Shown piece by piece: positions 8,578-37,828 of a DNA stretch of 64,000 nt. Source of the stretch: Malacoraja senta (taxonomy: Eukaryota); the NCBI GenBank assembly GCA_038087875.1, contig CM075977.1, positions 37,820,001-37,884,000 of the forward strand, in the 5' to 3' direction. The notes beneath the pieces are model-generated. The model saw only the letters and a list, made by a program, of their open reading frames with translations, did no database searches and was not told the DNA's origin. A program made the translations under genes and the position numbers. The first letter of the stretch is position 1; every line of letters starts with the position of its first letter.

Positions 8578-11500
8578 AACATAGAAACATAGAAAATAGG
8601 TGCAGGAGTAGGCCATTCGGCCCTTAGAGGCTGATCATCCAACTCAGTATCCTGTACCTACCTTCTCTCCATACCCACTGATCCCTTTAGCCACAAGGGC
8701 CACATCTAACTCCATCTTAGATATAGCCAATGAACTGGCCTCAACTACCTTCTGTGGCAGAGAATTCCACAGATTCACCACTCTATGTGTGAAAAATGAT
8801 TTTCTCATCTCGGTCCTAAAAGACTTCCCCCTTATCCTTAAACTGTGACCCCTTGTTCTGGACTTCCCAAACATCGGGAACAATCTTCCTGCATCTAGCC
8901 TGTCCAACCCCTTAAGAATCTTGTAAGTTTCTATAAGATCCCCCCTCAATCTTATAAATTCTAGCGAGTACAAGCCGAGTCTATACAGTCTTTCTTCATA
9001 TGAAAGTCCTGCCATCCCAGGAATCAGTCTGGTGAACCTTCTCTGTACTCCCTCTATGGCAAGAATGTCTTTCCCTTAGATTTGGTGACCAAAACTGTAC
9101 GCAATACTCCAGGTGTGGCCTCACCAAGACCCTGTACAACTGCAGTAGAACCTCCCTGCTCTTATACTCAAATCCTTTTGCTATGAATGCTAACATACCA
9201 TTCGCTTTCTTCACTGCCTGCTGCACCTGCATGCCTACTTTCAATGACTGGTGTACCATGACACCCAGATCTCGTTGCATCTCCCCTTTTCCTAATAGGC
9301 CACCATTCAGATAATAGTCTACTTTCCTGTTTTTGCCACCAAAGTGGATAACCTCACATTTATCCACATTATACTCCATCTGCCATGCATTTGCCCACTC
9401 ACCCAACCTATCCAAGTCACCTTGCAGCCTCCTAGCATCCTCCTCACAGCTAACACTGCCCCCCAGCTTCGTGTCATCCGCAAACATGGAGATGTTGCAT
9501 TCAATTCCCTCATCCAGATCATTAATATATATTGTAAATAGCTGGGGTCTCTGCACTGAGCCTTGCGGTACCCCACTAGTCACTGCCTGCCATTCTGAAA
9601 AGGACCCGTTTACTCCTACTCTTTGCTTCCTGTCTGCCAGCCAGTTCTCTATCCACATCAATACTGAACCCCCAATACCGTGTGCTTTAAGTTTGCATAC
9701 TAATCTCTTATGTGGTACCTTGTCGAAAGCCTTCTGAAAGTCCAGATATAACACATCCACTGGTTCTCCCTTATCCACTCTACTAGTTACATCCTCCAAA
9801 AATTCTATAAGATTCGTCAGACATGATTTATCTTTCATAAATCCATGCTGACTTTGTCCAATGATTTCACCACTTTCCAAATGTGCTGCTATCCCATCTT
9901 TAATAACTGACTCTAGCATTTTCCCCACTACCGATGTTAGACTAACTGGTCTGTAATTCCCCGTTTTCTCTCTCCCTCCCTTTTTGAAAAGTGGGGTTAC
10001 ATTAGCTACCCTCCAGTCCTCAGGAACTATCTCCAGAATCTGAAGAGTTCTGAGAAATTATCACTAATGCATCCACTATTTCTGGGGCTACTTCCTTAAA
10101 TACTCTGGGATGCAGCCTGTCCGGCCCTGGGGGTTTATCGGCCTTTAATCCATTCAATTTACCTAACACCACTTCCCGGCTAACCTGGATTTCACTCAGT
10201 TCCTCCATCTCATTTGACCCCTGGTCCCCTGCTATTTCCGGCAGATTATTTATGTCTTCCTCAGTGAAGACAGAACCAAAGTAGTTATTCAATTGGTCTG
10301 CCATATCCTTGTTCCCCATGATCAATTCACCAGTTTCTGACTGCAAGGGACCTACATTTGTTTTAACTAATCTTTTTCTCTTCACATATCTATAAAAACG
10401 TTTGCAGTCAGTTTTTATGTTCCCTGCCAGTTTTTTTTCATAATCTATTTTCCCTTTCCTTATTAGCCCTTTGTCCTCCTCTGCTGGACTCTGAATTTCT
10501 CCCAGTCCTCTGGTAGGCTGCTTTTTCTGGCTAATTTGTATGCTTCATCTTTTGTTTTGATACTATCCCTGATTTCCCTTGTTATCCACGGATGCGCTAC
10601 CTTCCCTGATTTATTCTTTTGCCAAATTGGGATGAACAATTGTTGTAGTTCATCCATGCAGTCTTTAAATGCCTTCCATTGCATATCCACCATCAACCCT
10701 TTAAGAATCACTTGCCAGTCTATCTTGGCCAATTCACGTCTCATACCCTCAAAGTTACCCTTCTTTAAGTTCAGAACCCTTGTTTCTGAATTAACAATGT
10801 CACTCTCCATCCTAATGAAGTACTCAACCATATTATGGTCACTCTTTCCCAAGGGGCCACGCACAACAAGACTGCTAACCAACCCTTCCTCATTACTCAA
10901 TACCCAGTCTAGAATAGCCTGTTCTCTCATTGGTTCCTCTACATGTTGGTTTAGAAAACTATCCCGCATACATTCCAAGAAATCCTCTTCCTCAGCACCC
11001 CTGCCAATTTGATTCACCCAATCTATATGTAGATTGAAGTCACCCATTATAACTCTTTTTACCTTTGTTGCAAGCATTTCTAATTTCCTGTTTGATGCCA
11101 TCCCCAACTCCACTACTACTGTTAGGTGGCCTGTACACAACTCCCACTAGCGTTTTCTGCCCCTTAGTGTTTCGCAGCTCTACCCATATCGATTCCACAT
11201 CCTCCAAGCTAATGTCCTTCCTTTCAATTGCGTTAATCTCCTCTCTAACCAGCAACATTATGCCACCTCCTTTTCCTTTCTGTCTATCCCTCCTGAATAT
11301 TGAATATCCCTGGATGTTCAGCTCCCAGCCTTGGTCACCCTGGAGCCATGTCTCCGTGATCCCAACTATATCATATTCATTAATAACTATCTGCACATTC
11401 AACTCATCCACCTTATTACGAATGCTCCTTGCATTGAGACACAAAGCCTTCAGGCTTGTTTTTACAACACTCTTACCCCTTATACAATTATGTTGAAAAG

Positions 11501-19830: not shown

Positions 19831-22410
19831 CTCTCACAGTACAAAATCTCCACTAGAGTGTATCTTAAATGTTTAGGCGTTGTAAAGGGGGGGCACCCTC
19901 TGAATGAGAGGTGGAAACAGATACTATAATAACTTTAAAAAAGGAGTTAAGTGTATGTATGAAGAGAAATGTTTCAGGAACATTCGAGGAAGGAGAATAT
20001 GAGTGTATCTAACTGGATAGATCTATAAGATCAATGATACCGGGACAATGGGCAATAGGGCCTTCATCTGTGCTATGTCATAGTTTGAGAATAATGTACT
20101 CAGGACAATATTTATCAGCAGTTAGCAATGAAAGAATAATATTTAACAACCTCCTGTGATCATTCACTGGGTTCAGTTTGGCTGTTGCAAAATGTCAAAT
20201 TATGTTCCTGTTCACTCACCTACTACTTGGCAAGACACAGTACAAATACAAACCCTTTGGTAAGACTGCAAAATTACTTGTGCTCTCAATCATAGCCTCT
20301 GGAATTCTAGCCTCCATGAGAAATCCATGGAGTTCATATCAAAGGAACAATACTTGGAAGGATCAGTCAATTGTGTCAATAAATGGCACAGAATGTTGTT
20401 ATTCCACAATAATATCAGCACTGTGCTGAGCTGAGGCTTTATAGGACATTGGTGAGGCCACATTTAGAATATTGTGAGCAGTTTCGAGCCCCAACACTTT
20501 TCCAACACGGCCTATCACCTTCCAAACCATGGCATTTCAAATTCTTATTTAAATCTACGAGTTTATTCCACAGTAGAATTTGTCAATACTTTCCATTTAC
20601 GAATTTGATAATTTCCTGGTTAGACAGTATATGGCCGGTTTAAGCTTTGTTTAGAACGATTTACAAATAAATTAAATGGCTATCTATTTCTATAAAACTG
20701 CCTTTGTCCAAAAATTAGAGTTTCTTCTAAATAATAGGATGTGAATCTGAAAATAAAAATTGTAATGCAGCTGCAATTTTTTATCATATCCCACTGTATA
20801 AGTACAGTATGTGACGGTTAAATTTATCTTTTAATCTCCTTGAGCATTTTGCAAGATTTCGGTAATTCCTTTCTCACTTTGTCATCCTAATTCATTGTGG
20901 TACAACTACTTCTCAGTTCATAGTTTCAGTTTGAGATCTCGACATGATAGTGCAGGCATATTACTGAGTGACTGATAACCAAAAAGAGTCATAACAAAAC
21001 AAGCTTGTTTGCACAAAAAACATGGTGTCAATGCTTTGCACAGAAGGGAAAGGACTTGTACAAGGCACTCTGCGATAGAAAATCCACTTAACTGGATCGG
21101 GGCATTCCAGTACTTCCAGAATGTGGAAGACTTTGGAATTTGAACTTTCCCTTTTTCTTTGTAAATGGCGCCAAAATATGGCAACTGTGCAATTGTGGGT
21201 TGTGCAAAAGAATTTCACATTGCTGTGCATACATGACAATGAAGAACCATTGAACACAACTGGGGAAGTGCAATTCAGCCAGGGATGTGTCAAGATTCTG
21301 GACCTAAGCCTTTCTCACAAAGTGTCCATTCCAAATAAACCGAGCAGAAGATCCACATCCATAGGATGCTTTCACCACAGCTCTGCAGTTTTTCATTCAC
21401 ATCTACCTCATGTGTCCCCCATCTCCATCCCAAAGTCCTTGAACAAGCTGTCACACTGGATTCTGTGGTTCTGTCTCTTACAGTCATTTAAACTCCAGTC
21501 AGGCTTACTCTGCACTGAAGTGACTCGAACCAAACTTCCAAAGAAAGTTGTGGATGCAGAACTGAAGGGGTGTAAATGTTTAAAGGTTCAAAGGCAAGAA
21601 GGAGATACTGATGTAGAGCAGGTCCAAGGATAATTCATACACCAATGTCATCAGTTCTGAGCCTTTTTCTAAGAATTGCACAGATTTGCCCTTCATGACC
21701 TGAGGTGTCCTCTTTAGGTTTATAGTAACATGTCGGCCTGTAAATCTAGAGTTCTGGTTTAATGATCAGGAAGCGTGATTTAAAGTTCCACCATGATAGC
21801 CATTCAGTCAAATAAATATGGGTGCAAAACTGGTATCATTAAAATTACGATGAAACACTGTCATTAAGAATACACTCAAGGGAATCTGGCAAGTTTACCT
21901 TATCAAATCTGCATGTGACCCCAGAACCATAGGGCTTATCTTTGTCACCCTGTAAAATGTCAGCCATTTCCAAAGACCACAGAAGAGTTATTAGTTTATA
22001 GAGTCAATATCATATCTATCTATATACTATTAAAACTGTGTGTGTGTGTGGATGTGTGTGTGGATGTGTTTATTTATTTGTGGGTGTCACATTTGGCCTT
22101 TGATTCCTTGCTCCACCAAAACCACACGCGAAAACTCCGCGATTTTTTCCATTATGCTAGACATTACACTTTTACATACCCTAACACACTCCTTATTAGA
22201 TTTAGACATTTTTATGTCCCCCCCCCACCCCCCCCCCCCCCCCCCCCACCCACCTCACTCGCTCATTTTGTCTCCTCCTGCTGGCCAGCCACCATAACGG
22301 CTGCTGCCGACCAGCTCTGCTCCAAAAACGCCGCAAATTTCTTTCTTTCGCTAGCGATTTTCGCCCCGGGGCTGAAGCGCGTTCGGGGTCCAGCACCAAC
22401 GTGTCTGCTC

Positions 22411-22614
22411 NNNNNNNNNNNNNNNNNNNNNNNNNNNNNNNNNNNNNNNNNNNNNNNNNNNNNNNNNNNNNNNNNNNNNNNNNNNNNNNNNNNNNNNNNN
22501 NNNNNNNNNNNNNNNNNNNNNNNNNNNNNNNNNNNNNNNNNNNNNNNNNNNNNNNNNNNNNNNNNNNNNNNNNNNNNNNNNNNNNNNNNNNNNNNNNNNN
22601 NNNNNNNNNNNNNN
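22411..22614. other. Assembly gap
   Basis: N run. Confidence 1.
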
Positions 22615-22895
22615 TCTTTGATTCGTTACTCCACCAAAACCAGACACAAAAACGCCGAGCTCTCCTCCAAAAACGGCGAGATTTTTCCCATTTCGCTAGC
22701 GATTTTACTTCCTCCACTCCCCCCCCCCCCCCCCCCCCCCGGCCCGGCTCTGTCATGCTGGCCGAAGCCAAAGATCGCCTGCTCCCCCCACTGCTTTTCG
22801 CCGTCCTCGCTGGCTTGCACTGTCTGAAAACCTCGCGCGTCAACGGCCTGTCGGCCCGCAGGTGCATTGTGGCCGTACCCAGCGTCCCGATGGGT

Positions 22896-23000
22896 GTACG
22901 CAGCGTCTTAACGTTTTACGCAGCGTCTTGACGTCGTACGCAGCGTCTTGACGTCGTACACAGCATCTTGATGTCGTACGCAGCGTCTTGACGGCGTACG
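22896..23000 (+). repeat. 20-bp minisatellite (GTACGCAGCGTCTTGACGTC), ~5 copies
   Basis: Direct tandem copies. Confidence 0.9.
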
Positions 23001-23096
23001 CCTAGCGCGTGGCGTTGCGCGATGACATCAGGCCGCCCCCTCCCCTTGCAACCGCGCGTTGCGGGAACAGACCCAACGGGTCTGCACTTGGTCTAG

Positions 23097-24238
23097 TAAT
23101 TATTAAAAGTCCGATCTTGTACGTGTGTATATGTGTGTGTGCATATATGTGTTCAAGAAGGAACTCTCAGTCTGAAGAAGGGTTTCGGCCCGAAACTTTG
23201 CCGACATCAGTCTGAAGAAGGGTTTCGGCCTGAAACGTTGCCTCATTCCTTCGCTCCATAGATGCTGCTGCACCCGCTGAGTTTCTCCAGCACTTTTGAC
23301 TACCTTTGTGCATATATGTAGTTGTCTTTACATCTTTGCAAAAACACTAGGCAGTAACTATTACATTTTTACATATCCCGATTGACATTTTTACGTCGAG
23401 GCCGGGAACACCTTATCTGAACATTTTTTGCTTTATTTCTCGACTTATTCATGACTCATTACTGATTAAAAGTCTAAAAAAGTCAAAAGACTTTGAAATT
23501 AAAACGACTGATGACGTCACAATGGCTCAGCTAGCAGTGATCAGCCTCAATGGAGATTTCATTCAATATTTGACACATTATTCGTGATTAAAGCTTTAAA
23601 AATGCCAACTTTCACAAGATTTTTACATATTCTGATTCACATTTTTCCCCTCCAGGCCGAGATCACCCTCACTGAACATTTTATGCTTTATTTCTCGACT
23701 TGTTACTGATTAAAAGTAAGAAGTTTAATGACATCAAAAGACTTTGAATTTAAAACGACCAGCTTTCACTGATGACGTCACAATGGTTCAGCTAGCAGTG
23801 ATCATCTTCACTGAAGATTTCATCCTATATTTGACAAGTTATTCGCAATTAAAGCTTTAAAAATGCCAACTTTCACAAGATTTTTACATATTCTGATTCA
23901 CATTTTTCCCCTCTAGGCATAGATCACTTTCACTGAACATTTTATGCTTTATTTCTTGACTTATTACGGATTAAAGTTTAACAATATCAAAAATCAAAAT
24001 GACCAGCTTCAACTGATGATGTCACAATGGCTCAGCTAGCAGGGGGAGGGCGAATTGCTATTGCAACACGCAGGGCAAGTGCAATTGGAATTTTTTTTAA
24101 AGAGCACTGCTGAGGGAGGCAAGGGGAGTGCTGAAATCTTATGTTCGGGAATAGCTTGAGTTGGAGGGCCACACCTCCCGTTGGGGCTACGGGTAGGGTA
24201 CGAGTGTGTTGGGGGAGCAGACCCAACGCACTTGGTCT
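23097..24238 (+). mobile_element. Non-autonomous Helitron module 2 with three ~250-bp internal repeats
   Basis: Starts TAATTATTAAAAGT (missing TCTA probably at 22015-22018); GATGA(C/T)GTCACAATGG.TCAGCTAGCAG recurs at ~23510, 23771 and 24015; ends CAGACCCAAC[6-bp deletion]GCACTTGGTCT. Confidence 0.8.
23151..23306 (+). mobile_element. 156-bp Penelope-type short insertion with two tandem hammerhead-core motifs
   Basis: 13-bp TSD TGTGCATATATGT (23138-23150, 23307-23319); CTGAAGA-stem-GAAA twice, 40 bp apart. Confidence 0.8.
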
Positions 24239-24444
24239 CCTATTATACTAAAACTCTTCCCTTTGTTCTCAACAATCTAAATTTCTGTGTGTATGCAGGG
24301 TTGTGTTGGGTTTCTTTTAATCTCTTCCAAAACACTTGGCCACAGCCTTCCCATTTTCACCCATGCTACTCACATTTTTTCCCTCGAAGGGATAAACATC
24401 TTTCCGTCGCATTCCAACCTATATTTCCAAAGTATTTAAAGTTT

Positions 24445-24778
24445 TATTTATATATTTATTTAATTCTTTATTTCGAACAGAATAAAAGAATAAAAAAGCA
24501 AGTGTGAAACAGCATACAAAAAACAAAACAAGAATATTTATAAAGTGTCATAAACAATATCTATAAATAAATGAAATCGTATGTGCCCGAAAAGGAGCAG
24601 GAAGAAGCCAAAGCTTATTAATTCCCACCCCATATTCAACTGCTTATAATTATCTGATACAAATTTAGCAGCTATATGTACACCATATGTACACCAGCAG
24701 CTATATGTACACCACATTATTTACATTTATACACTAATCAAATATTTACAAACCAAAAACAAAAAAAGAGAAAAAGAG
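24445..24778 (-). mobile_element. AT-rich LINE 3'-UTR fragment (L2/Crack-like) nested in module 3
   Basis: TTTATTTCGAACA...CGAAAAGGAGCAGGAAGAAG motif; AGTTT on both flanks. Confidence 0.45.
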
Positions 24779-25009
24779 AGTTTAATCGTTTATTTCCAAA
24801 ATTAACTACTTTTCAGTGGGAGACTCTTGCAGCACTTTCCATTGATGATGTCACAGTGCCATCTCACAGACGTCCAATCACAATGGATCTCATTTATATA
24901 TGACATCACAATGGGACAGGGATGGGAGATTGCAACCTTCACATTTTTCCACGAGTGTGATCAACCTAACGTGCACAATTAAATGAGTTAAAATAGAACA
25001 AGTTATCCT

Positions 25010-25345
25010 CCCCTCCCTCTAAACCCCCCTCCCTCTCTACCCCCCTCCCTATCTCCCCCTCCCTCTCTACATCCCTCCCTATCTACCCCCTCTGTCTCTA
25101 TTCCCCACCCTCTCTGCCCCCCCCTCCTGTCTGCCCTCCCCCTCCCTCTCTGCCCCCTCCCTGCCCCCTCCCTCTCTGCCCCCTTCCGTCTCTGCCCCCT
25201 CCATCTCTGCCCCCTCCCTCTCTGCCCCCTCCCTCTCTGCCCCCCCACTCCCTCTCTGCCCTCCCTACCTCTCTGCCCTCCTCTCCCTCTCTGCTCCCCC
25301 TCCCTCTCTGCACCCCCCTCCCTCTCTGCCCCCCCCCCTCTCTAG
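25010..25345. repeat. (CCCCTCCCTCTCTGC)n-like simple repeat
   Basis: Tandem C-rich units; similar units at 34131-34185. Confidence 0.85.
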
Positions 25346-26013
25346 GGAGTGGTGAGCATTTGGGACCTATGGGTGAGTGTTGGAGTATTGCGTTCGGGAA
25401 CCAGTCCTCCCCTGTGACACCCCCCTACCCCTCAAACTCTACCCCCTCTCTCTTCCTCTCTACCCCTCTCACCCTCTCCCTCTCTACCACCCCCATCCCT
25501 CTCTAGCCGCGCATGCGCAATTGGGGGCTATGCGTGAGTGGATAGGGCGGGGGATGGGGTAAAAGGAGCAAATGAATAATATTAATATAATATCAAGGGG
25601 CGGGGGTTAGTCTGTGTGTGTGAAGGGTGGTTAGTGTGACTCCGCAGGCTGCCCTACCCCCGCAACTGCTCGTTGAGGGGATGGGACCCAACGGGCCCCC
25701 CTTGGTTTCTCTATACTATTACTAAAAGTCTCATCTTGACCACTTCCTGTCTACATTGTAAATAAATTTTAGAAAAACGCTACCGTATATTGCTATATCG
25801 CTACCGTATATTCGCCATCTTACTCACCGTCCTCCTGTCCTCCAACCGCCCCAAGATTTTTTTCGATCGATGAAATAATAAAAAAGTTATGAATGTTTTA
25901 AAAATCATGAGATCAGCTGATTGGTCTTCTCGTCTGTCAATCACCATGATGAAGGTCACGCCCCTTCCGGGGGCCCAGGAGAATAAAGCCCTGGAGGCCG
26001 GACATGAGTCAGT

Positions 26014-26660
26014 TACTTTGCCTTGCACTTTGCTTGAAATGGAATTGGAAATGAAAATGAGTTCTTGGCCTTGCTCTGTGCTTGAAATTGAAATGGAAAT
26101 GGAAATGAAAATGAGTTGTTGGCCTTGCACTGTGCGTGAAATGGAAATGGAAATGAAAATGATTTGTTGGCCTTGCACTGTGCTTAAAATGGCAATGGAA
26201 ATGAAAATGAGTTGTTGGCCTTGTAATGTGCCTGAAATGGAAATGGAAATGAAAGTGAGTTGTTGGCCTTGCACTGTGCTTGAAATGGAAATGAAAATGA
26301 GTTGTTTTCCTTACACTGTGCTTGAAATGGAAATGGAAATGAAAATGAGTTGTTGGCCTTCCATTGTGCTGGAAATGGAAATGGAAATGAGTTATTGGCC
26401 TTGCACTGTGCTTGAAATGGAAATGAAAATGAATTGTTGGCCTTGCACTGTGCTTGAAATGGAAATGGAAATGAGTTGTTGGCCTTGCACTGGGCTTGAA
26501 ATGGAAATGAAAATGGTTTGTTGGCCTTGCACTGTGCTTGAAATGGAAATGGAAATGAAAATGAGTTGTTGGCCTTGCACTGTGCTTGAAATGGAAATGA
26601 AAATAAGTTGTTGGCCTTGCACTGTGGTTGAAATGGAAAGGAAATTAGTTGTTGGGCCTA
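26014..26660 (+). repeat. Minisatellite, 36/42/48-bp units (TTGGCCTTGCACTGTGCTTGAAATG[GAAATG]nAAAATGAGTTG), ~16 copies
   Basis: Direct tandem copies differing in GAAATG hexamer number. Confidence 0.95.
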
Positions 26661-27104
26661 CCTGAAACCACTCATTTCAGCCCACAAGGCCCCTATTAGC
26701 CAAGAAACCAGTTCCTTTTGCCTAAAATGCCCACATTAGCCCAGGAGGAGAATTTTGGCCCAAAAGGCCCATGCCTGGCCTGGAAAAGTCCATAAAAAGT
26801 GCCTTTCACTGAGATTTCATTTTTTTTTTAAAGAGTCCCTTTGACCCATCAGGACTGTACCAGCCCACGAGGATTCCCTTCAGCCCATCAGTAAGTATTC
26901 CCCCTGTAAGTATTAAACCCCACCCCAGTATTTTTCTCTCTCCCTTCATTGGCTCCCTGTGAGATCCAGGCCAGGATAGACTTTCCTCCTTCATTGCTGT
27001 GATCTGCAGAAAAAGATGACAAATGTCTAAAATTAATTCTCCACCCTCTCCCCCTTCTCTCTCACATTCTCTCGCCTGCTTTGGGCAGAATTTCTGGCAG
27101 TTTC

Positions 27105-28054
27105 TGAGCTGCCAGCCCACCAGCCCTGAGTGACTGATCTGCCAGCCCACCAGCCCTGAGTGACTGATCGGCCAGTCCACCAGCCCTGAATTAATGAGCT
27201 GCCATCCCACCAGCCCTGAGTGACTGATCTGCCAGTCCACCAGCCCTGAGTGACTGAGCTGCCATCCCACAAGGCCTGAGTGACTGAGCTGCCAGCCCAC
27301 CAGGCCTGTGACTGAGCTGCCATCCCACCAGGCCTGAGTGACTGAGCTGCCAGCCCACCAGGTCTGAGTGACTGAGCTGCCAGCCCACCAGGCCTGAGTG
27401 ACTGAGTTGCCAGCCCCCTCAGGCCTGGTGAGCTGCCAGCCCACCACGCCTGTGACTGAGCTGCCAGCCCACCACACCAGAGTGACTGAGCTGCCAGCCC
27501 ACCAGGACTGAGCTGCCAGCCCACCAGGCCTGAGTGACTGAGCTGCCAGCTCACCAGGCCTCAGTGACTGAACTGTCAGCTCACCAGGCCTGAGTGACTG
27601 AGCTGTCAGCCCACCAGGCCTGAGTGACTGAGCTGCCAGCCCACCAGGCCTGAGTGAGTGAGCTGCTAGCCCACCAGGCCTGAGTGACTGAACTGCCAGC
27701 CCACCACACCTGAGTGACTGAGCTGCCAGCCCACCAGGACTGAGCTGCCAGCCCACCAGGCCTGAGTGACTGAGCTGCCAGCTCACCAGGCCTCAGTGAC
27801 TGAACTGTCAGCTCACCAGGCCTGAGTGACTGAACTGTCAGCCCACCAGGCCTGTGTGACTGAGCTGCCAGCCCAACAGGCCTGAGTGACTGGGCTGCCA
27901 GCCCACCAGGCCTGAGTGACTGAGCTGCCAGCGCACCAGGCCTGAGTGAGTGAGCTGCTAGCCCACCAGGCCTGAGTGACTGAGCTGCCAGCCCACCAGG
28001 CCTGAGTGACTGAGCTGCCAGCCCACCAGGCCTGAGTGACTGAGCTGCCAGCCC
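27105..28054 (+). repeat. 30-bp minisatellite (GAGCTGCCAGCCCACCAGGCCTGAGTGACT), ~32 copies
   Basis: Direct tandem copies. Confidence 0.95.
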
Positions 28055-28116
28055 AAGAATCCATTCCGCCGACAATGTCCATACTAGCCCTCTGGAAACC
28101 AGTCCCTTCGGCCCAC

Positions 28117-28494
28117 AACACCCATACTAGTGCTCCAGAAAGCCCACCCCCCCACCCCTCACTGGCCACCAATATTGGAATTGGTGGAGAGGTGGAATAT
28201 TGCATTGGGGGCCAGTCCTCCCATGTGAACATAGTCCCCAATGGGTCCTACTTAGTCTAGTATAACTCTAAAACTCTCATCTTGTACATGTGTATATGTG
28301 TGTGTCTTTACATCTTCGCAAAAACACTACGCAGTAACGATAACATTTTTACATATTCTGGTTCACATTTCTCCCCTCTAGGCAGAGATTACCTTCACTG
28401 AACATTTTATGCTTTATTTCTCGACTTATTACTGAAAACGTTTAAAAACATCAAAACATCAAACATCAAAACATCAAAAACATCAAAAATCTTT
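28117..28494 (+). repeat. Left copy of ~378-bp direct repeat flanking L1 (spans module 4/5 junction)
   Basis: Near-identical to 33173-33552. Confidence 0.95.
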
Positions 28495-31400
28495 TTTTTT
28501 AATTTTTTTTTTTTTCATTTTTTTAAAATTAGAAGTAAGTACAATTGTATACAATCATATTTTCATAATACATTTTATGTACAGCTTCTTATTTTTTAAA
28601 TTTTGTAATAATGAAGAAAAAGAAAAATAAATTAGATAATGAAGAATAGAAAAATGTGAGATACTGTATATAGTGTGTGAAAAAGAAAAATAGAGAGTGA
28701 AAGAAGAAAGTTAAGAAATAGAAAATAGAAGAAAAAGAGTAAAAGAAGAAAAGAGAAGAAAAAGAAAAGAGAAGTAAGGAGATCGTATTTATAAACTTGA
28801 CCATTCCTCACCCAGTCACGGATTAGCTTTTACACTTGTGTTGCACCATATGTTTCCAAAAAGACGACAAATGGAGACCAACTCGTTATGAATTGGTCAA
28901 ATTTATCTATTAGGAGGAATAGCATTTCCTCAAAATGTGCGGTATCCAACATACTTGCAATCCACATTTTGAGCGTTGGTATTGGTGTATTTTTCCAAAA
29001 TTTCAACATTAATTTTTTTGCTATTATTAAACCATAATTAAAAAATAATTTTTGAGATGGGTTCAATTTGTTCCCATCTTCCATTACCCCAAATATAATC
29101 AATTCATTATTGGGTTCCATTTTTGTCTTAAATAATTTTGTGAATATTTCGAAAATATCACTCCAAAATCCATGAAGTTTTATACAAGAAACAAAAGAGT
29201 GTGTTATAGTTGCGTCTTGGGTTAAACATTTATCACAAATGGGGGATATATTTGGATAAAATTTATTTAATCTTATTTTTGAGTAATATAATCTATGTAA
29301 AATTTTAAATTGAATTAGATTATGTCTTGCGTTAATCGAACATTTGTGAATGTATGTCAAATACTTTTCCTATGTAGCCTTCGTAATTTTTATCAATAAT
29401 TCCCGTTCCCACTTTTCTCTAATTACCTCGGTCGCAGGTAAATCTATATTTAAGATACTATTATATAAATATGATATTAATTTTTGTGTGTCAGCTTTAA
29501 TATTCATTACTTCTTCTAGTAAATCAGGAGTTATTTTTTGATATCCCTGTATGTATGTCTTCAAGAAATTGCAAATCTGAAAATATTTAAAATAATGAGT
29601 GTTTTTCAATTTAAATTTTAATTGTAATTGTTGAAATGATAGTAAATCTCCCATTTCATACATATCCCCGATCCTTTTAATTCCTAAACTTTCCCATTGA
29701 TTATATATTTTATCCATCATAGATGGTTTAAATAAAGGATTATTCGCTATCGGTGTTAACAATGATAGGTTTCTTAGTTTTAAGGATAATTTTATTTGTT
29801 TCCATATTCTTATTGTATCTTGTATAATTGGGTTTTTCTTATATATTGTATTGTTCATTTTTTTCGGGGAGAAGAGGATTGTTCCTATATTACAAGGATA
29901 ACAATCCTCTTTCTCCATTTTTATCCATTCTGTCTGTTGGGTTGAACTATCCAACCAGTAAATTATATTCTTAATATGTATTGCCCAATAGTAATACAAA
30001 AAATTTGGGAGTGAAAGTCCCCCGACATATTTTGGTTTACATAAATGTTCTTTTTTAATTCTATGTGATTTATAGTCCCAAACAAAATTAGTAATGTTAG
30101 CATTCAATTTAGAAAAAAAATATTTTGGTACATATACTGGTATAGATTGAAATAGGTATAATAACTGTGGTAGAAAGCTCATTTTAATAGCATTTATTCT
30201 GCCTATTAATGATAAAGGAAGTGTTTTCCAAAATGTAATCGTTATATTAAGTTTATTTATTAAGGGTATAAAATTGGCGTTTAATAAAGCTTTATGTTTG
30301 CTAGTAATCTGAATACCCAGATATTTAAATTTTTCTGTTGCTATTTTAAAGGGGAATTTCAATAAGTGTGTAGATTCTTGAGGTTTTAACGTCATAATTT
30401 CACTTTTGTTCCAATTTATTCTATATCCAGAAAAGGACCCGAATTCCTCTATTAAATTTAATAAATTTGGTATGCTCGTTTGTGAATTTGTTGTATATAA
30501 CAGAATATCGTCTGCATACAATGAAATTTTATTATTTGAGTCTCTAGTATTATAACCCTGAATATTCGGATGGCTTCTTATACTTTCAGCCAGAAGTTCT
30601 ATCATAAGGGCAAATAGCAGGGGTGATAAAGCACACCCCTGCCTATTACCCCTTGATAATTGAATTTTTTGAGACAACATGCTGTTAGTTAATATTCTTG
30701 CCATCGGTTTATCATATAATAATTTCACCCATGCAATAAAGTTCTCTCCCATATTAAATTTTTGTAATACTTTGTATAAATACTGCCATTCTACCTGATC
30801 AAATGCTTTCTCTGCGTCCAAAGAAATAATTGATAAGTCTTCTTCCTCCACTTTAGGTGAGTACATTATATTAAACAGGCGTCTCAAATTATTAAATGAA
30901 TATCTTTTGGGTATAAACCCCGTTTGATCAGGGTTTATCAATTTACTAATATATTTGCTTAGTCTTCTGGCTAAAGTCTTTGCTAGGATTTTCTGATCTG
31001 TATTTAATAGTGATATAGCTCTATATGAGCCCGGTTCCTCTAGGTCTTTATCTTTCTTTGGAATAAGCGTAATAGTTGATTCTGCTAATGTTTCAGGTCA
31101 TTTATTTTCTTTAAAAACGTAAGTATATAAATTAAATAGATAGGGGGTCGTTATCTCATGAAACTTTTTATAAAATTCATTACTAAAACCATCTGGTCCC
31201 GGTGTCTTACCATTTTTCAACGATTTTATTGTTTCACCTATTTCTTCGATTGTAATTTGCGCTCCTAGTTCTTCTTGTTCCAAAAGGTCAAGTTTTGGTA
31301 GATTACAGTTATCTAAAAAAAATTTAATTTTACTATCTTCTGTTTTGGTTTTTGATGTGTATAAATTTTGATAAAATTGAACAAATCTTTTATTAATATC

Positions 31401-33172
31401 TTTAGGTAGTGTTAGTAATTCACCATTCTCGGATTTAATTTTATTTATAGTATTTTCCTTTTCCTCTTTTTTCAGTTGACGCGCCAACAGCTTATGTGGT
31501 TTGTCACCAAACTCAAAATATTCCTGTTTTGTAATTTGGAATAATCTTATTACTCTTGCCGAGAGAATTCGGTTAAGTTTAAATTTCAGTAGTATTATCT
31601 TATTATGTTTATCTATAGTGGGATCTTTAGCATTGTCTAACTCTAACTGTCTTATTTCTTGTTCTAACCACATTTGTTCTGTTTTATTCATCTTATTTTG
31701 AAAATTTTCATATGAAATTATAATTCCTCTAATAAATGCTTTAAAAGTTTCCCATAGTAAAGAAGGTGAGGTACCTGGTGTATCATTTATCTCAAAAAAT
31801 AATTTCATTTGTTGTTTCAAGTATTGATAACCCTGTAAGTCATTTAATATATGTGTATTAAACCTCCAAAAAAAATGTTTACCCGGCGTTCCCTCAAATT
31901 TTACTGAAAAAGTCAACAGAGAGTGATCAGAAATACTACTAATATGATATGTTGGGTTAATTGTATATGGCATTAATTTCCTATCCACTAAAAAATAATC
32001 AATTCTTGAATATGTTTTATGTACCGAAGAGTAAAACGAATATTCCCTTCCTGCTGGATTAGCAGATCTCCATACATCTGTTATGTTAGTATTTTTTATA
32101 TATGTATTTAGAAGTTCACTAGTCTTGGATTTTATATTACTCCTTCTTTGTTTTGCTGATTTGTCTAAATATGGATCTAAAACACAGTTGAAATCCCCTC
32201 CTATTATCACATTTTGATAATTAAACTCCAGTATTATATCTATAATTTTCTCAAAAAATTGAGGGTTATCAAAATTCGGAGCGTAAATATTTACCATAGT
32301 TATTGGGGTAGCATAAATTTCTCCCGAAACTATGATATACCTTCCCTCTTTATCTGATATAGTATTCTTTAATTTGAACGGTATACCTATCCGAATAAGA
32401 ATAGCCGTACCTCTAGATTTAGAAGTAAATGATGAATAATATGTTTGGCCTATCCACTTTGCCTTTAATCTCATTTGTGTTTCCTGTTTCATGTGAGTTT
32501 CTTGCAAGTAGATTATGTCGCTTTTCAAAGATTTTAAGTGAGCAAAAATGTTACCCCTCTTTATTGGTTCGTTGGCACCCCTTATATTCCAACTACAGAA
32601 TGTGATTCCTCCATTCTTTATTTGTCTATCTTCTTGCATTGTATATCAAAGTAATATTCTTGAATCATATGGTGCTGACAAATACCTCCGTGTTCTGGAC
32701 GTTGGGTGGTCATTCCAAGTTTTTAAGTTTACATTACATCTCCTTCTCCAAAAGTGCCTTAGATAAAGCAAGAAAAATTGTGATTTACAATTAATTAAAC
32801 ACAAACTAAGTAAATACAAATTTGTATAGTGATTAAAAAAAAAGTGAAATTAAGGTATCTAAGAACAGGTACCTTAAAGAGAGATAGCCACCTAAGGTGG
32901 CGAAGAATTTATAGACTTCCATTGATGTTGTTTTACATTGAGCCCCAATCCCTTATTAACACCTCGTAAAAAACTACAGACCGTCTCATATCTTGTTTAT
33001 TCTTGTTTAACTTTATCAAACTAGCATTAGTAAAAAGCAAAAAGCCGCAGATATAAAATATTAAAAAGTAAAAAAATAAAGCTACCCTACAAGCAGGTAC
33101 CGAGGGGTTAACCTCATTCCTGGTTTTTTTCCAAGTTTATGTTGCGTTCCCACCCAAAAAGAACGCAACATA
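28495..33172 (-). mobile_element. Young L1-clade LINE, 5'-truncated in the inter-ORF spacer (no ORF1)
   Basis: Poly-T (poly-A tail on minus strand) at ~28492-28523; AT-rich 3' UTR; complete ORF2; ~530 bp of non-coding sequence upstream of ORF2. Confidence 0.95.
28830..32639 (-). pseudogene. L1 ORF2 (APE + RT + C-terminal Cys/His domain), ~1269 codons, two in-frame stops
   Basis: SWNIRG, YLQETH, GGDFN, SRIDY, SDH; SLDAEKAFD, RQGCALSP, LYADD; CDKC..HSFVSC; three ORF pieces in one frame, separated by TGA (31098-31100) and TAG (29370-29372). Confidence 0.95.
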
Positions 33173-33552
33173 AACACCCATACTAGTGCTCCAGAAAGCC
33201 CCCCCCCCCCCCACCCTCACTGGCCACCAATATTGGAATTGGTGGAGAGGTAGAATATTGCATTGGGGGCCAGTCCTCCCATGTGAACATGGTCCCCAAC
33301 GGGTCCTACTTAGTCTAGTATAACTCTAAAACTCTCATCTTGTACATGTGTATATGTGTGTGTCTTTACATCTTCGCAAAAACACTACGCAGTAACGATA
33401 ACATTTTTACATATTCTGGTTCACATTTCTCCCCTCTAGGCAGAGATTACCTTCACTGAACATTTTATGCTTTATTTCTCGACTTATTACTGAAAACGTT
33501 TAAAAACATCAAAACATCAAACATCAAAACATCAAAAACATCAAAAATCTTT
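33173..33552 (+). repeat. Right copy of ~378-bp direct repeat flanking L1
   Basis: Near-identical to 28117-28494. Confidence 0.95.
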
Positions 33553-33647
33553 GAATTTAAAATGACCAGCTTTCACTGATGCCGCCTCACACACGGAATC
33601 TTCCACGCGCTTCGAGTGACGTCACCCCACCGGGTGCTTCACCCTGT

Positions 33648-34118
33648 GCCCCCGGGTTATTCACACTCCCCCTCCCCCCCGGGTTATTCACACCCCCCGC
33701 ATCGCCGAAAAAGACGCCACCGGTGGAACAAAGGACGAGCCCGGACATTGAGTCGGGCCTATTGGAGTGTTTTTTTTCAGGCTTATGTTTCAGAGAAAAT
33801 GAGTGAGACCAAGCAGAGAAAGCAATGTTTCTGAGGAGCTAGAATGGCACAACCAACTAATAGGTCGCGGCTTGAATTTCTCTCCGCACAGCCCAGCTCA
33901 AAAAGGCAGCAAACATACCCTGGGTTATTTACCCCCCTCCCCCCCGGGTTATTCACACCCCCACCCCCCCCGGGTTATTCACCCCCCCCGGGTTAATTAC
34001 ACTCCCTCCCCCCAGCCCCCTCTGGGTTATTCACACTCCCCCCCCACGGGTTATTCAGACCCCCCCCCCCTGAGTTATTCACACTCATCCTCCCCACCAC
34101 CTGGGTTATTCACACCAT
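33648..34118 (+). repeat. Degenerate minisatellite (CCCCGGGTTATTCACAC..)n in module 5
   Basis: About ten GGGTTATTCAC cores separated by C-runs. Confidence 0.8.
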
Positions 34119-34190
34119 CCCGCACATTCCACCCCCTCCCTCTCTGCCCCCACCCTCTCTGCCCCCCTCCCTCTCTGCCCCCCTCACCCT

Positions 34191-34606
34191 CTTTCAATGT
34201 AGACCGGAGAGTGAGGGGACCAGCTCAAGAGCAAAGATCATAGAGCAGAGTGGGGTCAGCAAGCGATGGATAACAGGACAGCGGGCGGTGGAGCTTACTC
34301 CTGTGTCAGCGCGAGTAACCTCAATTGGGAATGGAGGGTTATGGTCTGAGTGCAGGTAGATGGGACTAGGGGGAAGAAAGAAGAAAGAAAAAAAAAAAGT
34401 GTTCGGCACGGACTTGAAGGGCCGAGATGGCCTGTTTCCGTGCTGTAATGGTTATATGGTTATATGGTAATGGTCCCTTGATCGTGCTGACACAGGAGTA
34501 AGCTCCACCGCCCGCTGTCTGTTATCCATCGCTCACTGACCCACTCCGCTCTATGATCTTTGCTCTTGAGCTGGTCCCCTCACTGGCCGGTCTCCTACAT
34601 TGAAAG
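34191..34606. repeat. ~120-bp inverted repeat (arms 34191-34314 and 34482-34606) with a CR1 3' fragment in the spacer
   Basis: Arms are reverse complements with few mismatches; spacer 34327-34472 is a CR1 3' UTR with (GGTTATAT)n tail. Confidence 0.85.
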
Positions 34607-34799
34607 ACACGGACCATGCATTGTCATCCAGCGCAGCAAGTGAGGCCATGTCCTGCTCCCGGCGGCAGTCGGAATTTAAGGATTTGCCGGAAGCGGCTGA
34701 CATGAGCGAGGCCGGCAAGCGGCAGGAGAGAGGTGAGAAATTCTATGTCCCGCCAGCCATTTTTCAAAAATGTAGCAACTCAAAATGGGGGAGTGTCTT

Positions 34800-34836
34800 C
34801 GACACAGGTGCGTCTTCTTTGCCGGGAAATACGGTA
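34800..34836. mobile_element. Single TIR-like end of a Tc1-mariner/pogo-type MITE
   Basis: ..GTGCGTCTTCTTTGCCGGGAAATACGGTA (reverse complement TACCGTATTTCCCGG); no partner end found. Confidence 0.5.
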
Positions 34837-35961
34837 CATAAAATAGACAACGATTACAACTGATGGAGAGAGGTGGCCAATGGGCAATGGTGTTTTTTCT
34901 CCATATCTATTTCTTCAAATGGAATCAAGGTGTTCAGCCAAAGCAACTCTCACATGGATGCATCTTGGAATATTCCCTCTTCCTTCTCTTCTTCTTTGTC
35001 AAGTCAGCCGGCATTGCCATTCTTTATGGTTGATGGAAGAGAGCTACTCTATCAATCTCTATCTCAGATACATGAAACTAAGAAGGCAAGCAGATGGATG
35101 AGCTTCTTGGCTGGACCCACCCTAATCTGACTGATTGCTGAAGAGTAATATGCTAATGTCTGAATGATACTAATTCCATTATCAATTCTATTCTGCTGCG
35201 TCACTGCCTTATTTCTGATATATGTGCTCACCCAGTTATGTGGAGTCTTAGACAATAGACAATAGACAATAGGTGCAGGAGTAGGCTATTCGGCCCTTCG
35301 AGCCAGTACTGCCAATCACTGTGATCATTGCTGATCATCCACAATTAGTACCCCGTTCCTGCCTTCTACCCCTATCTTTAAGAGCTCTATCTAACTCTCT
35401 CTTGAAAGCATCCAGAGAATTGGCCTCCACTGCCTTCTGAGGCAGAGAATTCCACAGATTCATAACCCTCTGTGTGAAAACGTTTTTCCTCATCTCCATT
35501 CTAAATGGCTTATTCTTAAATTGTGGCCCCTGGTTCTGGACTCCCCCAACACTGGGAACATGTTTCCTGCCTCTAGTGTATTCAAACCATTAATAATCTT
35601 ATGTTTCAATAAGATCCCCTCTCATCCTTCTAAATTCCAGAGTATACAAGCCCAGCCGCTCCATTCTCTCAGCATATGACAGTCCCGCCATGAATCTACG
35701 CTGCACTCCCTCAATAGCAAGAATGTCCTTCCGCAAATTTGGAGACCAAAACTGCACACAATACTCCAGGTGTGGTCTCACTAGGGCCCTGTACAACTGC
35801 AGAAGGACCTCTTTGCTGCTGTACTCAACCCCTCTTGTTATGAAGGCCAACATGCCATTAGCTTCCTTCACTGCCTGCTGTACCTGCATGCTTACTTTCA
35901 TTGACTGATAAACAAGGACCCCCAGATCTCATTGTACTTCCACTTTTCCCAATTTGACACC

Positions 35962-36100: not shown

Positions 36101-37828
36101 AATTTGACACCATTCAGATAATAATCTGCCTTTCTGTTTTTGCCACCAAGGTGGTTAACCTCACATTTATCCACATTAAACTGCATCTGCCATGCATCTG
36201 CCCACTCACCCAACCTGTCCAAGTCACCCTGCATCCTCATAGCATCTTCCTCACAGTTCATCCTGCCAGCCAGCTTTGTGTCATCTGCAAATTTGCTAAT
36301 GTTACTTTTAATTCCTTCATCTAAATCATTAATGTATATTGTAAATAGCTGCGGTCCCAGCACCGAGCCTTGCGGTACCCCACTATTCACTGCCTGCCAT
36401 TCTGAAAGGGACCTGTTAATCCCTACTCTTTGTTTCCTGTCTGCCAACCAATTTTCTATCCATGTCAGTACCCTACCCCCAATACCATGTGCTCTAATTT
36501 TGCCCACTAATCTCCTATGTGGGACCTTATCATATGCTTTCTGAAAGTCCAGGTATACTGCATCCACTGGCTCTCCTTTGTCCATTTTCCAAGTTACATA
36601 CTCAAAAAATTCCAGAAGATTAGTCAAGCATGATTTCCCCTTCGTAAATCCATGCTGACTCGTAAATCCATCCTGTTACTGCTATTCAAATGTGTCGCTA
36701 TTTCATCTTTTATAATTGACTCCAGCATCTTCCCCACCACCATCAGGCCCTGGGGATTTATCAGCCTTCAGTCCCATCAGTCTACCCAACACCATTTCCT
36801 GCCAAATGTGAATTTCCTTCAGTTCCTCCGTCACCTTAGATCCTCTGCCCACTAGTATATCAGGGAGATTGTTTGTGTCTTCCTTAGAGAAGACGATCCA
36901 AAGTACCTGTTCAACTCATCTGCCATTTCCTTGTTCCCCATAATAAATTCACCTGTTTCAGTCTTCAATAGTCCAACTTTGGTCTTAACTAATTTTTACT
37001 CTTCACATACCTAAAGAAGCTTTTACTATATTGTTGGCTACCTTATCTTCACACCTCATCTTTTCTCCCCATATTGCCTTTTTAGTTATCTTCTGTTGCT
37101 CTTTAAAAGATTCCCAATCCTATGGCTTCCCGCTCATGTGTGCTATGTTATACTTCTTCTCTTTTATTTTTATGCTGTCCCTGACTTCCCTTGTCAACCA
37201 CGGTCGCCCCTTACTCCCCTTGGAATCTTTCTTCCTCTTTGGAATGAACTGACCCTGCACCTTCTGAATTATTCCCAGAAATACCTGCTATTGTTGTTCC
37301 ACTGTCATCCCTGCTAGGGTATCTTTGCAGTCAACTTTGGCCAGTTCCTCCCTCATGGCTCCATAGTCCCCTTTGTTTAAGTGTAATAGTGACACTTCCG
37401 ATTTTCCCTTCTCCCTCTCAAATTATAGATTAAAACTTATCGTATTATGGTCACTATCTCCTAATGGCTCCTTTACCTCGAGTTCCCTTATCAAATCAGG
37501 TTCATTACACAACACTAAATCCAGAGTTGCCTTCTCCCTGATAGGCTCCAGTACAAGCTGCTCTAAGAATCCATCTTGGAGGCACTCCACAAACGCTCTT
37601 TCTTGGGGTCCAGTACCAACCTGATTTTCACAGTCTACCTTCATGTTGAAATCTCCCATAACAACCGTAGCATTACCTTTGCGACATGCCAATTTTAACT
37701 TGATTTAACTTGCACCCTATATCCAGGCTACTGTTTGGGGGCTTGTAGATAACTCCCATTAGGGTCTTTTTACCCATACAATTCCTCAGTTCTATCCATA
37801 CTGACTCTACATCTCCTGATTTTATGTC

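What the first reader, a model, noticed from the sequence alone, without database searches (positions are those of the whole stretch)
28117..33552. L1 flanked by a ~378-bp direct repeat: candidate giant target-site duplication
Seen: 28117-28494 and 33173-33552 differ by only a few substitutions and a poly-C length change, and they bracket the L1 exactly. The poly-A tail starts where the left copy ends (..AAAAATCTTT), and the right copy continues CTTT/GAA, close to the L1 endonuclease TTTT/AA preference. Established: genomic L1 TSDs are normally about 7-20 bp. Inference: second-strand cleavage occurred ~380 bp from the first nick. The event duplicated the Helitron 3' hairpin+CTAG and the next 5' start. 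The L1 therefore now lies between a Helitron start (28261) and a Helitron end (33318), a unit that might be mobilised as a Helitron carrying L1 ORF2.
Basis: partly seen in the sequence, partly recalled or inferred. Interest (0 to 1): 0.72.

Follow-up and report, generated by a model that had tools for sequence, protein, structure and literature searches.

The report
L1 insertion with 378-bp target duplication
A dead 4.7-kb L1 jumping gene in a fish (reportedly skate) genome sits exactly between two near-identical 378-base copies of its landing site, so its insertion most likely duplicated about 25 times more host DNA than usual; this outcome is known from human cell cultures and tumours but is seldom seen fixed in a germline.

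Summary
28117-28494 and 33173-33552 are a 378/380-bp direct repeat, 98% identical, and the only long non-satellite direct repeat in the window. They abut a 4,678-bp minus-strand L1-clade element exactly: endonuclease, reverse transcriptase, C-terminal zinc-finger-like region, one 1,269-codon frame with two stops, A-rich tail.

Sister copies of the surrounding repeat read straight through the right copy into the right flank. The L1 tail therefore interrupts that sequence at CTTT/G, an L1-endonuclease-like site. The 5' junction shows 3 nt of microhomology and a 15-nt inverted stub. This geometry fits target-primed reverse transcription with the second-strand break about 378 bp from the first nick, i.e. 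a giant TSD (confidence about 0.7).

It is not proven.

The 'Helitron' label for the duplicated cassette joint is only partly met, and the idea of Helitron-driven mobilisation of the L1 has no support.

Giant L1 TSDs are known from HeLa, repair-deficient cells and tumours, so this is a new member of a known kind. Unchecked notes from this scan list at least 8 other L1 copies with 40 bp-2.4 kb flanking duplications in the same genome.

The parts
28117..28494 (.). Left copy of the duplicated target (378 bp). It holds the last 144 bp of the upstream cassette, the joint, and the first 234 bp of the next cassette.
   Evidence: continuity with the left flank is suggested by a degenerate 43-bp periodicity, 28074-28113 being 63% like 28117-28156 (family D5)
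33173..33552 (.). Right copy of the duplicated target (380 bp). It runs on without a break into the right flank.
   Evidence: sister copies at 23420-23535, 23672-23800 and 23935-24045 read through the 33552/33553 boundary
28495..33172 (-). L1-clade non-LTR retrotransposon copy, 4,678 bp, GC 29%, 39% A on the sense strand.
   Evidence: Pfam Exo_endo_phos 2e-16, RVT_1 2.4e-30, zf-RVT 1.5e-4; the RT piece matches human L1 ORF2p at 3e-74 against R2 at 6e-17; closest named proteins are teleost L1-like RTs at 40-44% identity
28830..32639 (-). ORF2, a single frame of 1,269 codons. It is broken by in-frame stops at codon 514 (31100-31098) and codon 1090 (29372-29370). There are no frameshifts.
28495..28524 (-). 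A-rich 3' tail (T-rich on the + strand, with four interruptions), directly abutting the end of the left copy.
32640..33172 (-). 533-bp non-coding leader upstream of the ORF2 ATG. No ORF1 is present.
   Evidence: the longest ORF is 57 aa and there are no Pfam hits; the stretch occurs in other family copies at roughly 15-27% of the depth of the ORF2 5' end
33135..33175 (-). Perfect 15-bp inverted repeat (arms 33135-33149 and 33161-33175) at the L1 5' junction. The outer arm overlaps the right copy by 3 nt (AAC on +, GTT on the sense strand).
   Evidence: read; DNA fold -19.4 kcal/mol, z = -4.3
28257..28260 (+). CTAG end of the upstream cassette inside the left copy. The next cassette starts at 28261.
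   Evidence: joint alignment
33315..33318 (+). The same CTAG joint inside the right copy.

Best explanation
One L1 retrotransposition event by target-primed reverse transcription. Shown: the pre-insertion sequence was left flank, one copy of the 378-bp stretch, then right flank. Inferred: the + strand was nicked at ...ATCTTT/GAATTT (equivalent to 33552/33553), and its T-rich 3' end primed reverse transcription on the L1 poly-A. The opposite strand was then broken about 378 nt away (between 28117 and 28116) instead of the usual 7-20 nt. That break came either from a distant nick or from repair or break-induced synthesis at the reciprocal end. The free 3' end ...GTT paired with the cDNA end through 3 nt of microhomology, after a short snap-back or mini twin-priming had added a 15-nt inverted stub. 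Fill-in of the two long single-stranded gaps copied the 378 bp onto both sides of the L1. The copy later acquired two stop codons, and the two repeat copies drifted 1-2% apart.
For: (1) Exact geometry: the tail begins at the last base of the left copy and the L1 5' end abuts the first base of the right copy. (2) Three sister copies of the cassette elsewhere in the window read ...CTTTGAATTTAAAA(C/T)GACCAGC... without interruption. So right copy plus right flank is the native sequence, and the L1 tail cuts it at CTTT/G. Sites such as CTTT/a, TCTT/g and TTTT/g are listed among real human L1 cleavage sites in PMC5223499. (3) The left flank and the start of the left copy share a degenerate 43-bp periodicity. 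The sequence in front of the right copy is L1 instead. (4) The element is a bona fide L1-clade ORF2 element with an A-rich tail. (5) Ages are compatible. The two copies differ at about 6 events in 378 bp. The L1 carries 2 stops and no frameshift in 3.8 kb, and at 23 or more listed positions nearly all family contigs read another letter. (6) It is the only long non-satellite direct repeat in 64 kb. (7) TSDs over 100 bp and up to several kb are documented L1 outcomes.
Against: No empty allele, orthologous site or spanning long read was seen. The laid runs gave only ~100-150-nt unitigs from very high-copy repeats. All differences between the copies lie in the first 126 bp, on one side of the cassette joint. 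That is mildly unexpected for a single duplication of uniform age. The inferred second break site (TGTT/GT on the sense strand) is not a clear EN consensus.
Confidence: 0.7

Rival explanations
1. The duplication was made at the L1 site but not by a staggered second nick of TPRT. Candidates are break-induced or template-switch repair synthesis after an L1-induced double-strand break, or a later rearrangement that copied the 378 bp to the far side of the L1.
For: [quoted passage not shown] The inverted stub and microhomology at the 5' junction are marks of repair-type joining.
Against: The end product is identical to a giant TSD, so sequence cannot separate the two routes. A later, L1-independent event would need breakpoints that coincide with both L1 ends to the base.
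Confidence: 0.12
2. A tandem duplication of the 378-bp stretch existed before the L1 arrived. The L1 landed exactly at the joint between the two copies, without making a TSD of its own.
For: The cassette family is prone to internal tandem repeats: a ~265-bp unit occurs three times at 23313-24045. A tandem joint would read CTTT/AAC, also an EN-like site. The uneven spread of differences could reflect an older duplication partly homogenised.
Against: It needs an insertion within about 1-2 bp of the joint (roughly 0.5% of a 756-bp target). It also needs a TSD-less insertion, since no copy of the left copy's end stands in front of the right copy. The sister cassette's internal repeat does not cover the cassette joint.
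Confidence: 0.07
3. 28261-33318 is a composite Helitron-like cassette (234-bp start + L1 + 146-bp end). It arrived as a unit, head-to-tail, at the joint between two related cassettes.
For: The region is a head-to-tail train of cassettes with a conserved joint motif. The 234 bp after the joint are 100% identical, whereas the 144 bp before it differ by about 4%, a split that coincides with the joint. A hairpin plus CTAG 7 nt later straddles the L1 5' end and the right copy (33135-33186).
Against: It needs a mini-cassette chimeric between the two neighbouring cassette types, an L1 inserted exactly at its chimeric point without a TSD, and then insertion exactly between those two same neighbours. 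The CCATACTAG motif after the hairpin is part of a 43-bp degenerate repeat also present at 28079-28087, where no hairpin precedes it. No Rep/helicase ORF is in the window.
Confidence: 0.04
4. Assembly artefact: the true locus has one copy of the stretch, or a different arrangement.
For: The locus lies in very high-copy repeats (k-mer depths of 10^4-10^6). Several other 'giant TSD' notes in the same assembly could in principle share a systematic cause.
Against: A normal short-TSD insertion has both L1 junctions at one point of the target. Here the tail is joined to the end of the stretch and the 5' end to its start, which no haplotype overlap or collapse of a normal insertion produces. There are no N gaps in 27000-35000. 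The copies carry distinct substitutions.
Confidence: 0.05

Closest known systems
Large (>100 bp to several kb) TSDs of engineered human L1 in cultured cells (Gilbert 2002/2005 and Symer 2002 as cited in PMC5223499; Servant et al. 2017, PMC5223499)
   Same: An L1 with an A tail at an EN-type site, flanked by a direct duplication of hundreds of bp. 5'-truncated or otherwise atypical 5' junctions go with such 'radical' target alterations (PMC2912911).
   Different: Those are somatic events in HeLa cells (<10% of events) or NER-deficient cells (median 1.5 kb). This one is a fixed or at least assembled germline copy of a non-mammalian L1, old enough to carry stops.
L1-associated small tandem duplications in tumours and L1-induced clones (bioRxiv 10.1101/2024.12.14.628481)
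   Same: Duplication of the target around a polyadenylated L1 insertion, regarded there as a large TSD.
   Different: Those are 1-10 kb, somatic, and attributed to break-induced replication. Here the duplication is 378 bp and the route cannot be told from sequence.
Ordinary genomic L1 TSDs (~15 bp; 5-30 bp)
   Same: Same position relative to the tail and the 5' end, and a TT/AAAA-like first nick (PMC2912911).
   Different: About 25 times longer.
5'-inverted L1 (twin priming)
   Same: An inverted copy of L1 sequence at the 5' junction, joined through microhomology.
   Different: Only 15 nt are inverted, lying 11 nt from their template, so a hairpin results. Typical twin-priming inversions are hundreds of bp long.

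Membership tests
L1 (LINE-1 clade) non-LTR retrotransposon | N-terminal APE-type endonuclease in ORF2 | tested here: met
   Pfam Exo_endo_phos, E 2e-16, residues 15-239, full profile
L1 (LINE-1 clade) non-LTR retrotransposon | Reverse transcriptase closest to L1 ORF2p rather than to other LINE clades | tested here: met
   Human L1 ORF2p chains match at E 3e-74 over 514 residues; R2 proteins match at 6e-17 or weaker; RVT_1 2.4e-30
L1 (LINE-1 clade) non-LTR retrotransposon | C-terminal Cys/His-rich region | tested here: inconclusive
   zf-RVT at 22.8 bits, below the 27.5-bit curated cut-off; a Cys-Cys-His-Cys pattern is visible in the translation
L1 (LINE-1 clade) non-LTR retrotransposon | ORF1 upstream of ORF2 | tested here: not met
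   The 533 bp upstream of ORF2 hold no ORF longer than 57 aa and no Pfam hit. The copy is either 5'-truncated downstream of ORF1 or belongs to an ORF1-less lineage. This says the copy is incomplete or atypical; it does not argue against the clade.
L1 (LINE-1 clade) non-LTR retrotransposon | A-rich 3' tail | tested here: met
   28495-28524, read
Target-site duplication made by TPRT | The direct repeat abuts both element ends exactly, with the tail next to the first-nick site | tested here: met
Target-site duplication made by TPRT | First nick at an L1-EN-like T-rich/purine site | tested here: met
   CTTT/G on the primed strand; comparable sites are listed for human L1 in PMC5223499. The preference of this fish L1's endonuclease is itself unknown.
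Target-site duplication made by TPRT | The empty site holds one copy of the repeat | not testable with these tools
Target-site duplication made by TPRT | Repeat divergence matches the age of the insert | tested here: inconclusive
   About 6 events in 378 bp, against 2 stops and 23 or more private positions in 4.7 kb. The order of magnitude agrees, but the differences cluster in the first 126 bp.
Helitron (for the duplicated cassette joint) | 3' end CTRR | tested here: met
   CTAG at 28257-28260 and 33315-33318, and at the sister joint 23096
Helitron (for the duplicated cassette joint) | 5' end TC | tested here: not met
   All five cassette starts read TA(T/A)...
Helitron (for the duplicated cassette joint) | Hairpin about 10-12 nt before the 3' end | tested here: inconclusive
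   Sister joints have GACCC-AAC-GGGTC 10 nt before CTAG. In this copy only CCC/GGG can pair.
Helitron (for the duplicated cassette joint) | Rep/helicase protein, or proven dependence on one | tested here: not met
   No ORF of Rep/Hel size in the window. A non-autonomous status was not tested.

The most novel reading that the evidence does not exclude
Long target duplications (10^2-10^3 bp) are a habitual outcome of LINE integration in this genome, not a one-off accident. That would mean a shift, at the level of the L1 lineage or of the host's repair environment, in where the second strand is broken. L1 would then be a regular source of small segmental duplications, including promoters and exons. 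Unchecked notes from this scan list flanking duplications of 40, 163, ~480, 498, ~700, 784, 871 bp and 2.4 kb around other L1 copies, and 106 bp around a HERO element, in the same genome.
Probability: 0.25. Interest if true: 0.75.

Novelty: new member of a known kind. Interest (0 to 1): 0.45.

Why it matters
How and where the second DNA strand is cut during L1 integration is still the least understood step of target-primed reverse transcription. Giant TSDs are the natural read-out of that step going 'long'. So far they are documented mostly in cultured or repair-deficient human cells and in tumours. A germline-transmitted example in a cartilaginous-fish-type genome shows that the outcome survives in nature and creates small segmental duplications. 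If the many similar cases noted in this genome hold up, it would offer a natural system for asking what sets the second-break position. By itself, a single case is a modest addition.

Tried and rejected
(1) Read laying on 27900-33800 with four runs. All runs are Logan unitigs of ~100-150 nt. Both the L1 and the duplicated stretch are extremely high copy in organisms E and A. The few 'joints' (e.g. 28120>33178, three contigs) are what paralogous copies of the cassette would give, so I do not count them as an empty allele.

Other copies of the family and their TSDs therefore could not be fetched.

(3) Self-BLAST and tblastn of the window found no second copy of this L1 family. Only two distant RT fragments appeared.

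(4) Scans of metagenome and prokaryote collections were not used. The protein search shows nothing closer than about 48% identity from JGI sources, so they could not hold this family.

(5) Rfam found nothing in the window.

(6) Pfam on the short ORFs upstream of ORF2 found no ORF1 remnant.

(7) A findings search by sequence with the 5' leader was blank, which means nothing according to the operators' note.

(8) I considered reading the 5' hairpin plus CTAG as a Helitron 3' end and rejected it as the less likely reading. The CCATACTAG motif belongs to a 43-bp degenerate repeat that also occurs without a hairpin.

Full report
**Observation**

The repeat finder, a pairwise alignment and a script agree. 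28117-28494 (378 bp) and 33173-33552 (380 bp) are direct repeats.
- They differ by five substitutions (28146, 28154, 28194, 28233, 28242) and a 2-bp indel in a poly-C run.
- A self-BLAST of the whole window finds no other long direct repeat apart from satellites.
- There are no N runs between 27000 and 35000.

**What lies between the copies**

28495-33172 is one element on the minus strand. It is 4,678 bp long, with 29% GC against 40-50% around it.
- It carries a single 1,269-codon frame, 32639-28830, with stops at codons 514 and 1090 and no frameshift.
- Pfam hits are an APE-type endonuclease (2e-16), RVT_1 (2.4e-30) and a sub-threshold zf-RVT.
- The RT piece matches human L1 ORF2p at 3e-74, against 6e-17 for R2 proteins.
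- The nearest named proteins are teleost L1-like RTs at 40-44% identity, and the best unnamed hit is 75% identical.
- On this evidence the element is L1-clade.
- The 533 bp upstream of the ORF2 ATG contain no ORF longer than 57 aa and no Pfam match, so this copy has no ORF1.
- That leader is nevertheless present in other family copies, at roughly 15-27% of the depth of the ORF2 5' end.
- At the first stop, nearly all family contigs carry a different letter from this copy. The break is therefore private to this copy or its lineage.

**3' junction**

On the + strand the left copy ends ...ATCTTT, followed directly by a 30-nt T-rich run, which is the element's A tail. The right copy ends with the same ...ATCTTT, followed by GAATTTAAAATGACCAGC.

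Three sister copies of the same cassette elsewhere in the window (23420-23535, 23672-23800, 23935-24045) read through this point without interruption. So right copy plus right flank is the native sequence, and the L1 tail cuts it at CTTT/G on the primed strand. On the L1 sense strand this reads TTC/AAAG, close to the TT/AAAA preference described for L1 (PMC2912911). It is also like sites listed for real human insertions (PMC5223499).

**5' junction**

The L1 sense strand starts immediately after the last base of the right copy. A perfect 15-bp inverted repeat (33135-33149 / 33161-33175) sits there. As DNA it folds at -19.4 kcal/mol, z = -4.3. Its outer arm overlaps the repeat copy by 3 nt.

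I read this as a short snap-back or mini twin-priming product, joined to the target's free 3' end through GTT/AAC microhomology. This is inference.

The alternative is that hairpin plus CTAG (33183-33186) forms a Helitron-type 3' end. That is less likely. The CCATACTAG motif is part of a 43-bp degenerate repeat that also occurs at 28079-28087 with no hairpin before it. The same periodicity links the left flank (28074-28113) to the start of the left copy, which suggests they are natively contiguous.

**Mechanism**

The simplest history is a single TPRT event in which the second-strand break lay about 378 nt from the first nick. Fill-in then copied the intervening DNA to both sides of the insert.

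No tandem duplication, unequal exchange or haplotype-overlap artefact of a normal short-TSD insertion gives this arrangement. The tail is joined to the end of the stretch and the 5' end to its start. Every other route needs breakpoints that coincide with both L1 ends to the base.

Ages agree in order of magnitude. The copies differ at about 6 events in 378 bp. The L1 carries 2 stops in 3.8 kb, and at 23 or more listed positions the family reads otherwise.

One caveat remains. All differences lie in the first 126 bp, the GC-rich end of the upstream cassette. The 234 bp after the cassette joint are identical. Poly-C slippage and one CpG transition explain part of this. Gene conversion, or the composite-cassette rival, cannot be excluded.

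**What could not be done**

- Both the L1 family and the duplicated cassette are extremely abundant in two organisms (summed k-mer depths of 10^4-10^6). No piece bridges a junction informatively, and no empty allele can be claimed.

**The Helitron part of the finding**

The region 22015-34190 is a head-to-tail train of cassettes with a conserved joint...GACCCAACGGGTC, about 10 nt, CTAG, then TATA..TAAAA(C/G)TCTCATCTTG. The duplicated 378 bp do include one such joint.

For Helitron membership, the 3' CTAG is met and the 5' TC is not met. The hairpin is weak in this copy, and no Rep/helicase ORF is nearby.

That the L1 now lies between a cassette start and a cassette end follows automatically from duplicating a joint. 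I found nothing to suggest mobilisation as a Helitron.

**Comparison with what is known**

Genomic L1 TSDs are about 15 bp, with a 5-30 bp range (PMC2912911; PMC5223499).
- TSDs over 100 bp occur in fewer than 10% of HeLa events.
- They dominate in NER-deficient cells, ranging from 5 bp to 5.3 kb with a median of about 1.5 kb (PMC5223499).
- 'Extremely long TSDs' go with 5'-truncated insertions (PMC2912911).
- L1-linked 1-10-kb duplications in tumours and induced clones are regarded as large TSDs (10.1101/2024.12.14.628481).
- I found no paper on skate or other cartilaginous-fish L1 TSDs in the held library.

This case is therefore a new, natural, germline member of a known kind.

**Earlier notes of this scan**

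These are unchecked leads, not evidence. They call the genome a skate. They list at least 8 other L1 copies flanked by duplications of 40 bp to 2.4 kb, and one HERO element with 106 bp. I could not read those windows. They motivate the novel case, that long TSDs are habitual in this genome. Only a genome-wide census can decide that.

**Verdict**

- Observation: confirmed.
- Giant-TSD reading: likely, about 0.7.
- Helitron-mobilisation idea: unsupported.
- Interest: moderate.

Noticed in passing
window 22015-34190: Head-to-tail train of different cassettes sharing a conserved joint motif: a GACCCAACGGGTC hairpin, about 10 nt, CTAG, then TATA..TAAAA(C/G)TCTCATCTTG. Joints lie at 23096, 24244, 25712, 28260 and 33318. 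Starts are TA, not the canonical Helitron TC, and no Rep/helicase ORF is in the window.
   Followed up: partly
window 27104-28055: 30-bp satellite of 32.5 copies (unit CTGAGCTGCCAGCCCACCAGGCCTGAGTGA). It has the highest summed k-mer depth of the laid stretch, about 1.4 million in two organisms' runs.
   Followed up: no
window 23313-24045: A sister cassette carries a ~265-bp internal unit three times in tandem. The unit overlaps part of the sequence duplicated around the L1, so this repeat family is itself prone to tandem duplication.
   Followed up: partly
window 28143-28158 (minus strand): G-run motif GGGGTGGGGGGGTGGG on the L1-sense strand, 26-42 nt inside the duplication from the inferred second-strand break. 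It is a possible G-quadruplex near the break point. Its poly-C complement is where the two copies differ most.
   Followed up: no
window 34201-34593: Nested inverted repeats: 54-nt arms at 94% and 38-nt arms at 97% complementarity. Together they form a ~390-bp foldback just right of the cassette train.
   Followed up: no
window 33625-34126: C-rich 24-31-bp repeat with core CCCGGGTTATTCACAC, 11 or more copies in two blocks.
   Followed up: no
window 26020-26655: 42/48/90-bp satellite with a (GAAATG)n-containing unit, about 13 copies.
   Followed up: no
window 9449-9865 (-) and 36199-36657 (-): Two distant reverse-transcriptase fragments, 24-25% identical to this L1's RT. They probably belong to other LINE clades.
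   Followed up: no
window 32640-33172 (-): This L1 copy has a 533-bp non-coding leader directly upstream of ORF2 and no ORF1. Other family copies share the leader, so the lineage may be ORF1-less or may have a long inter-ORF spacer.
   Followed up: partly
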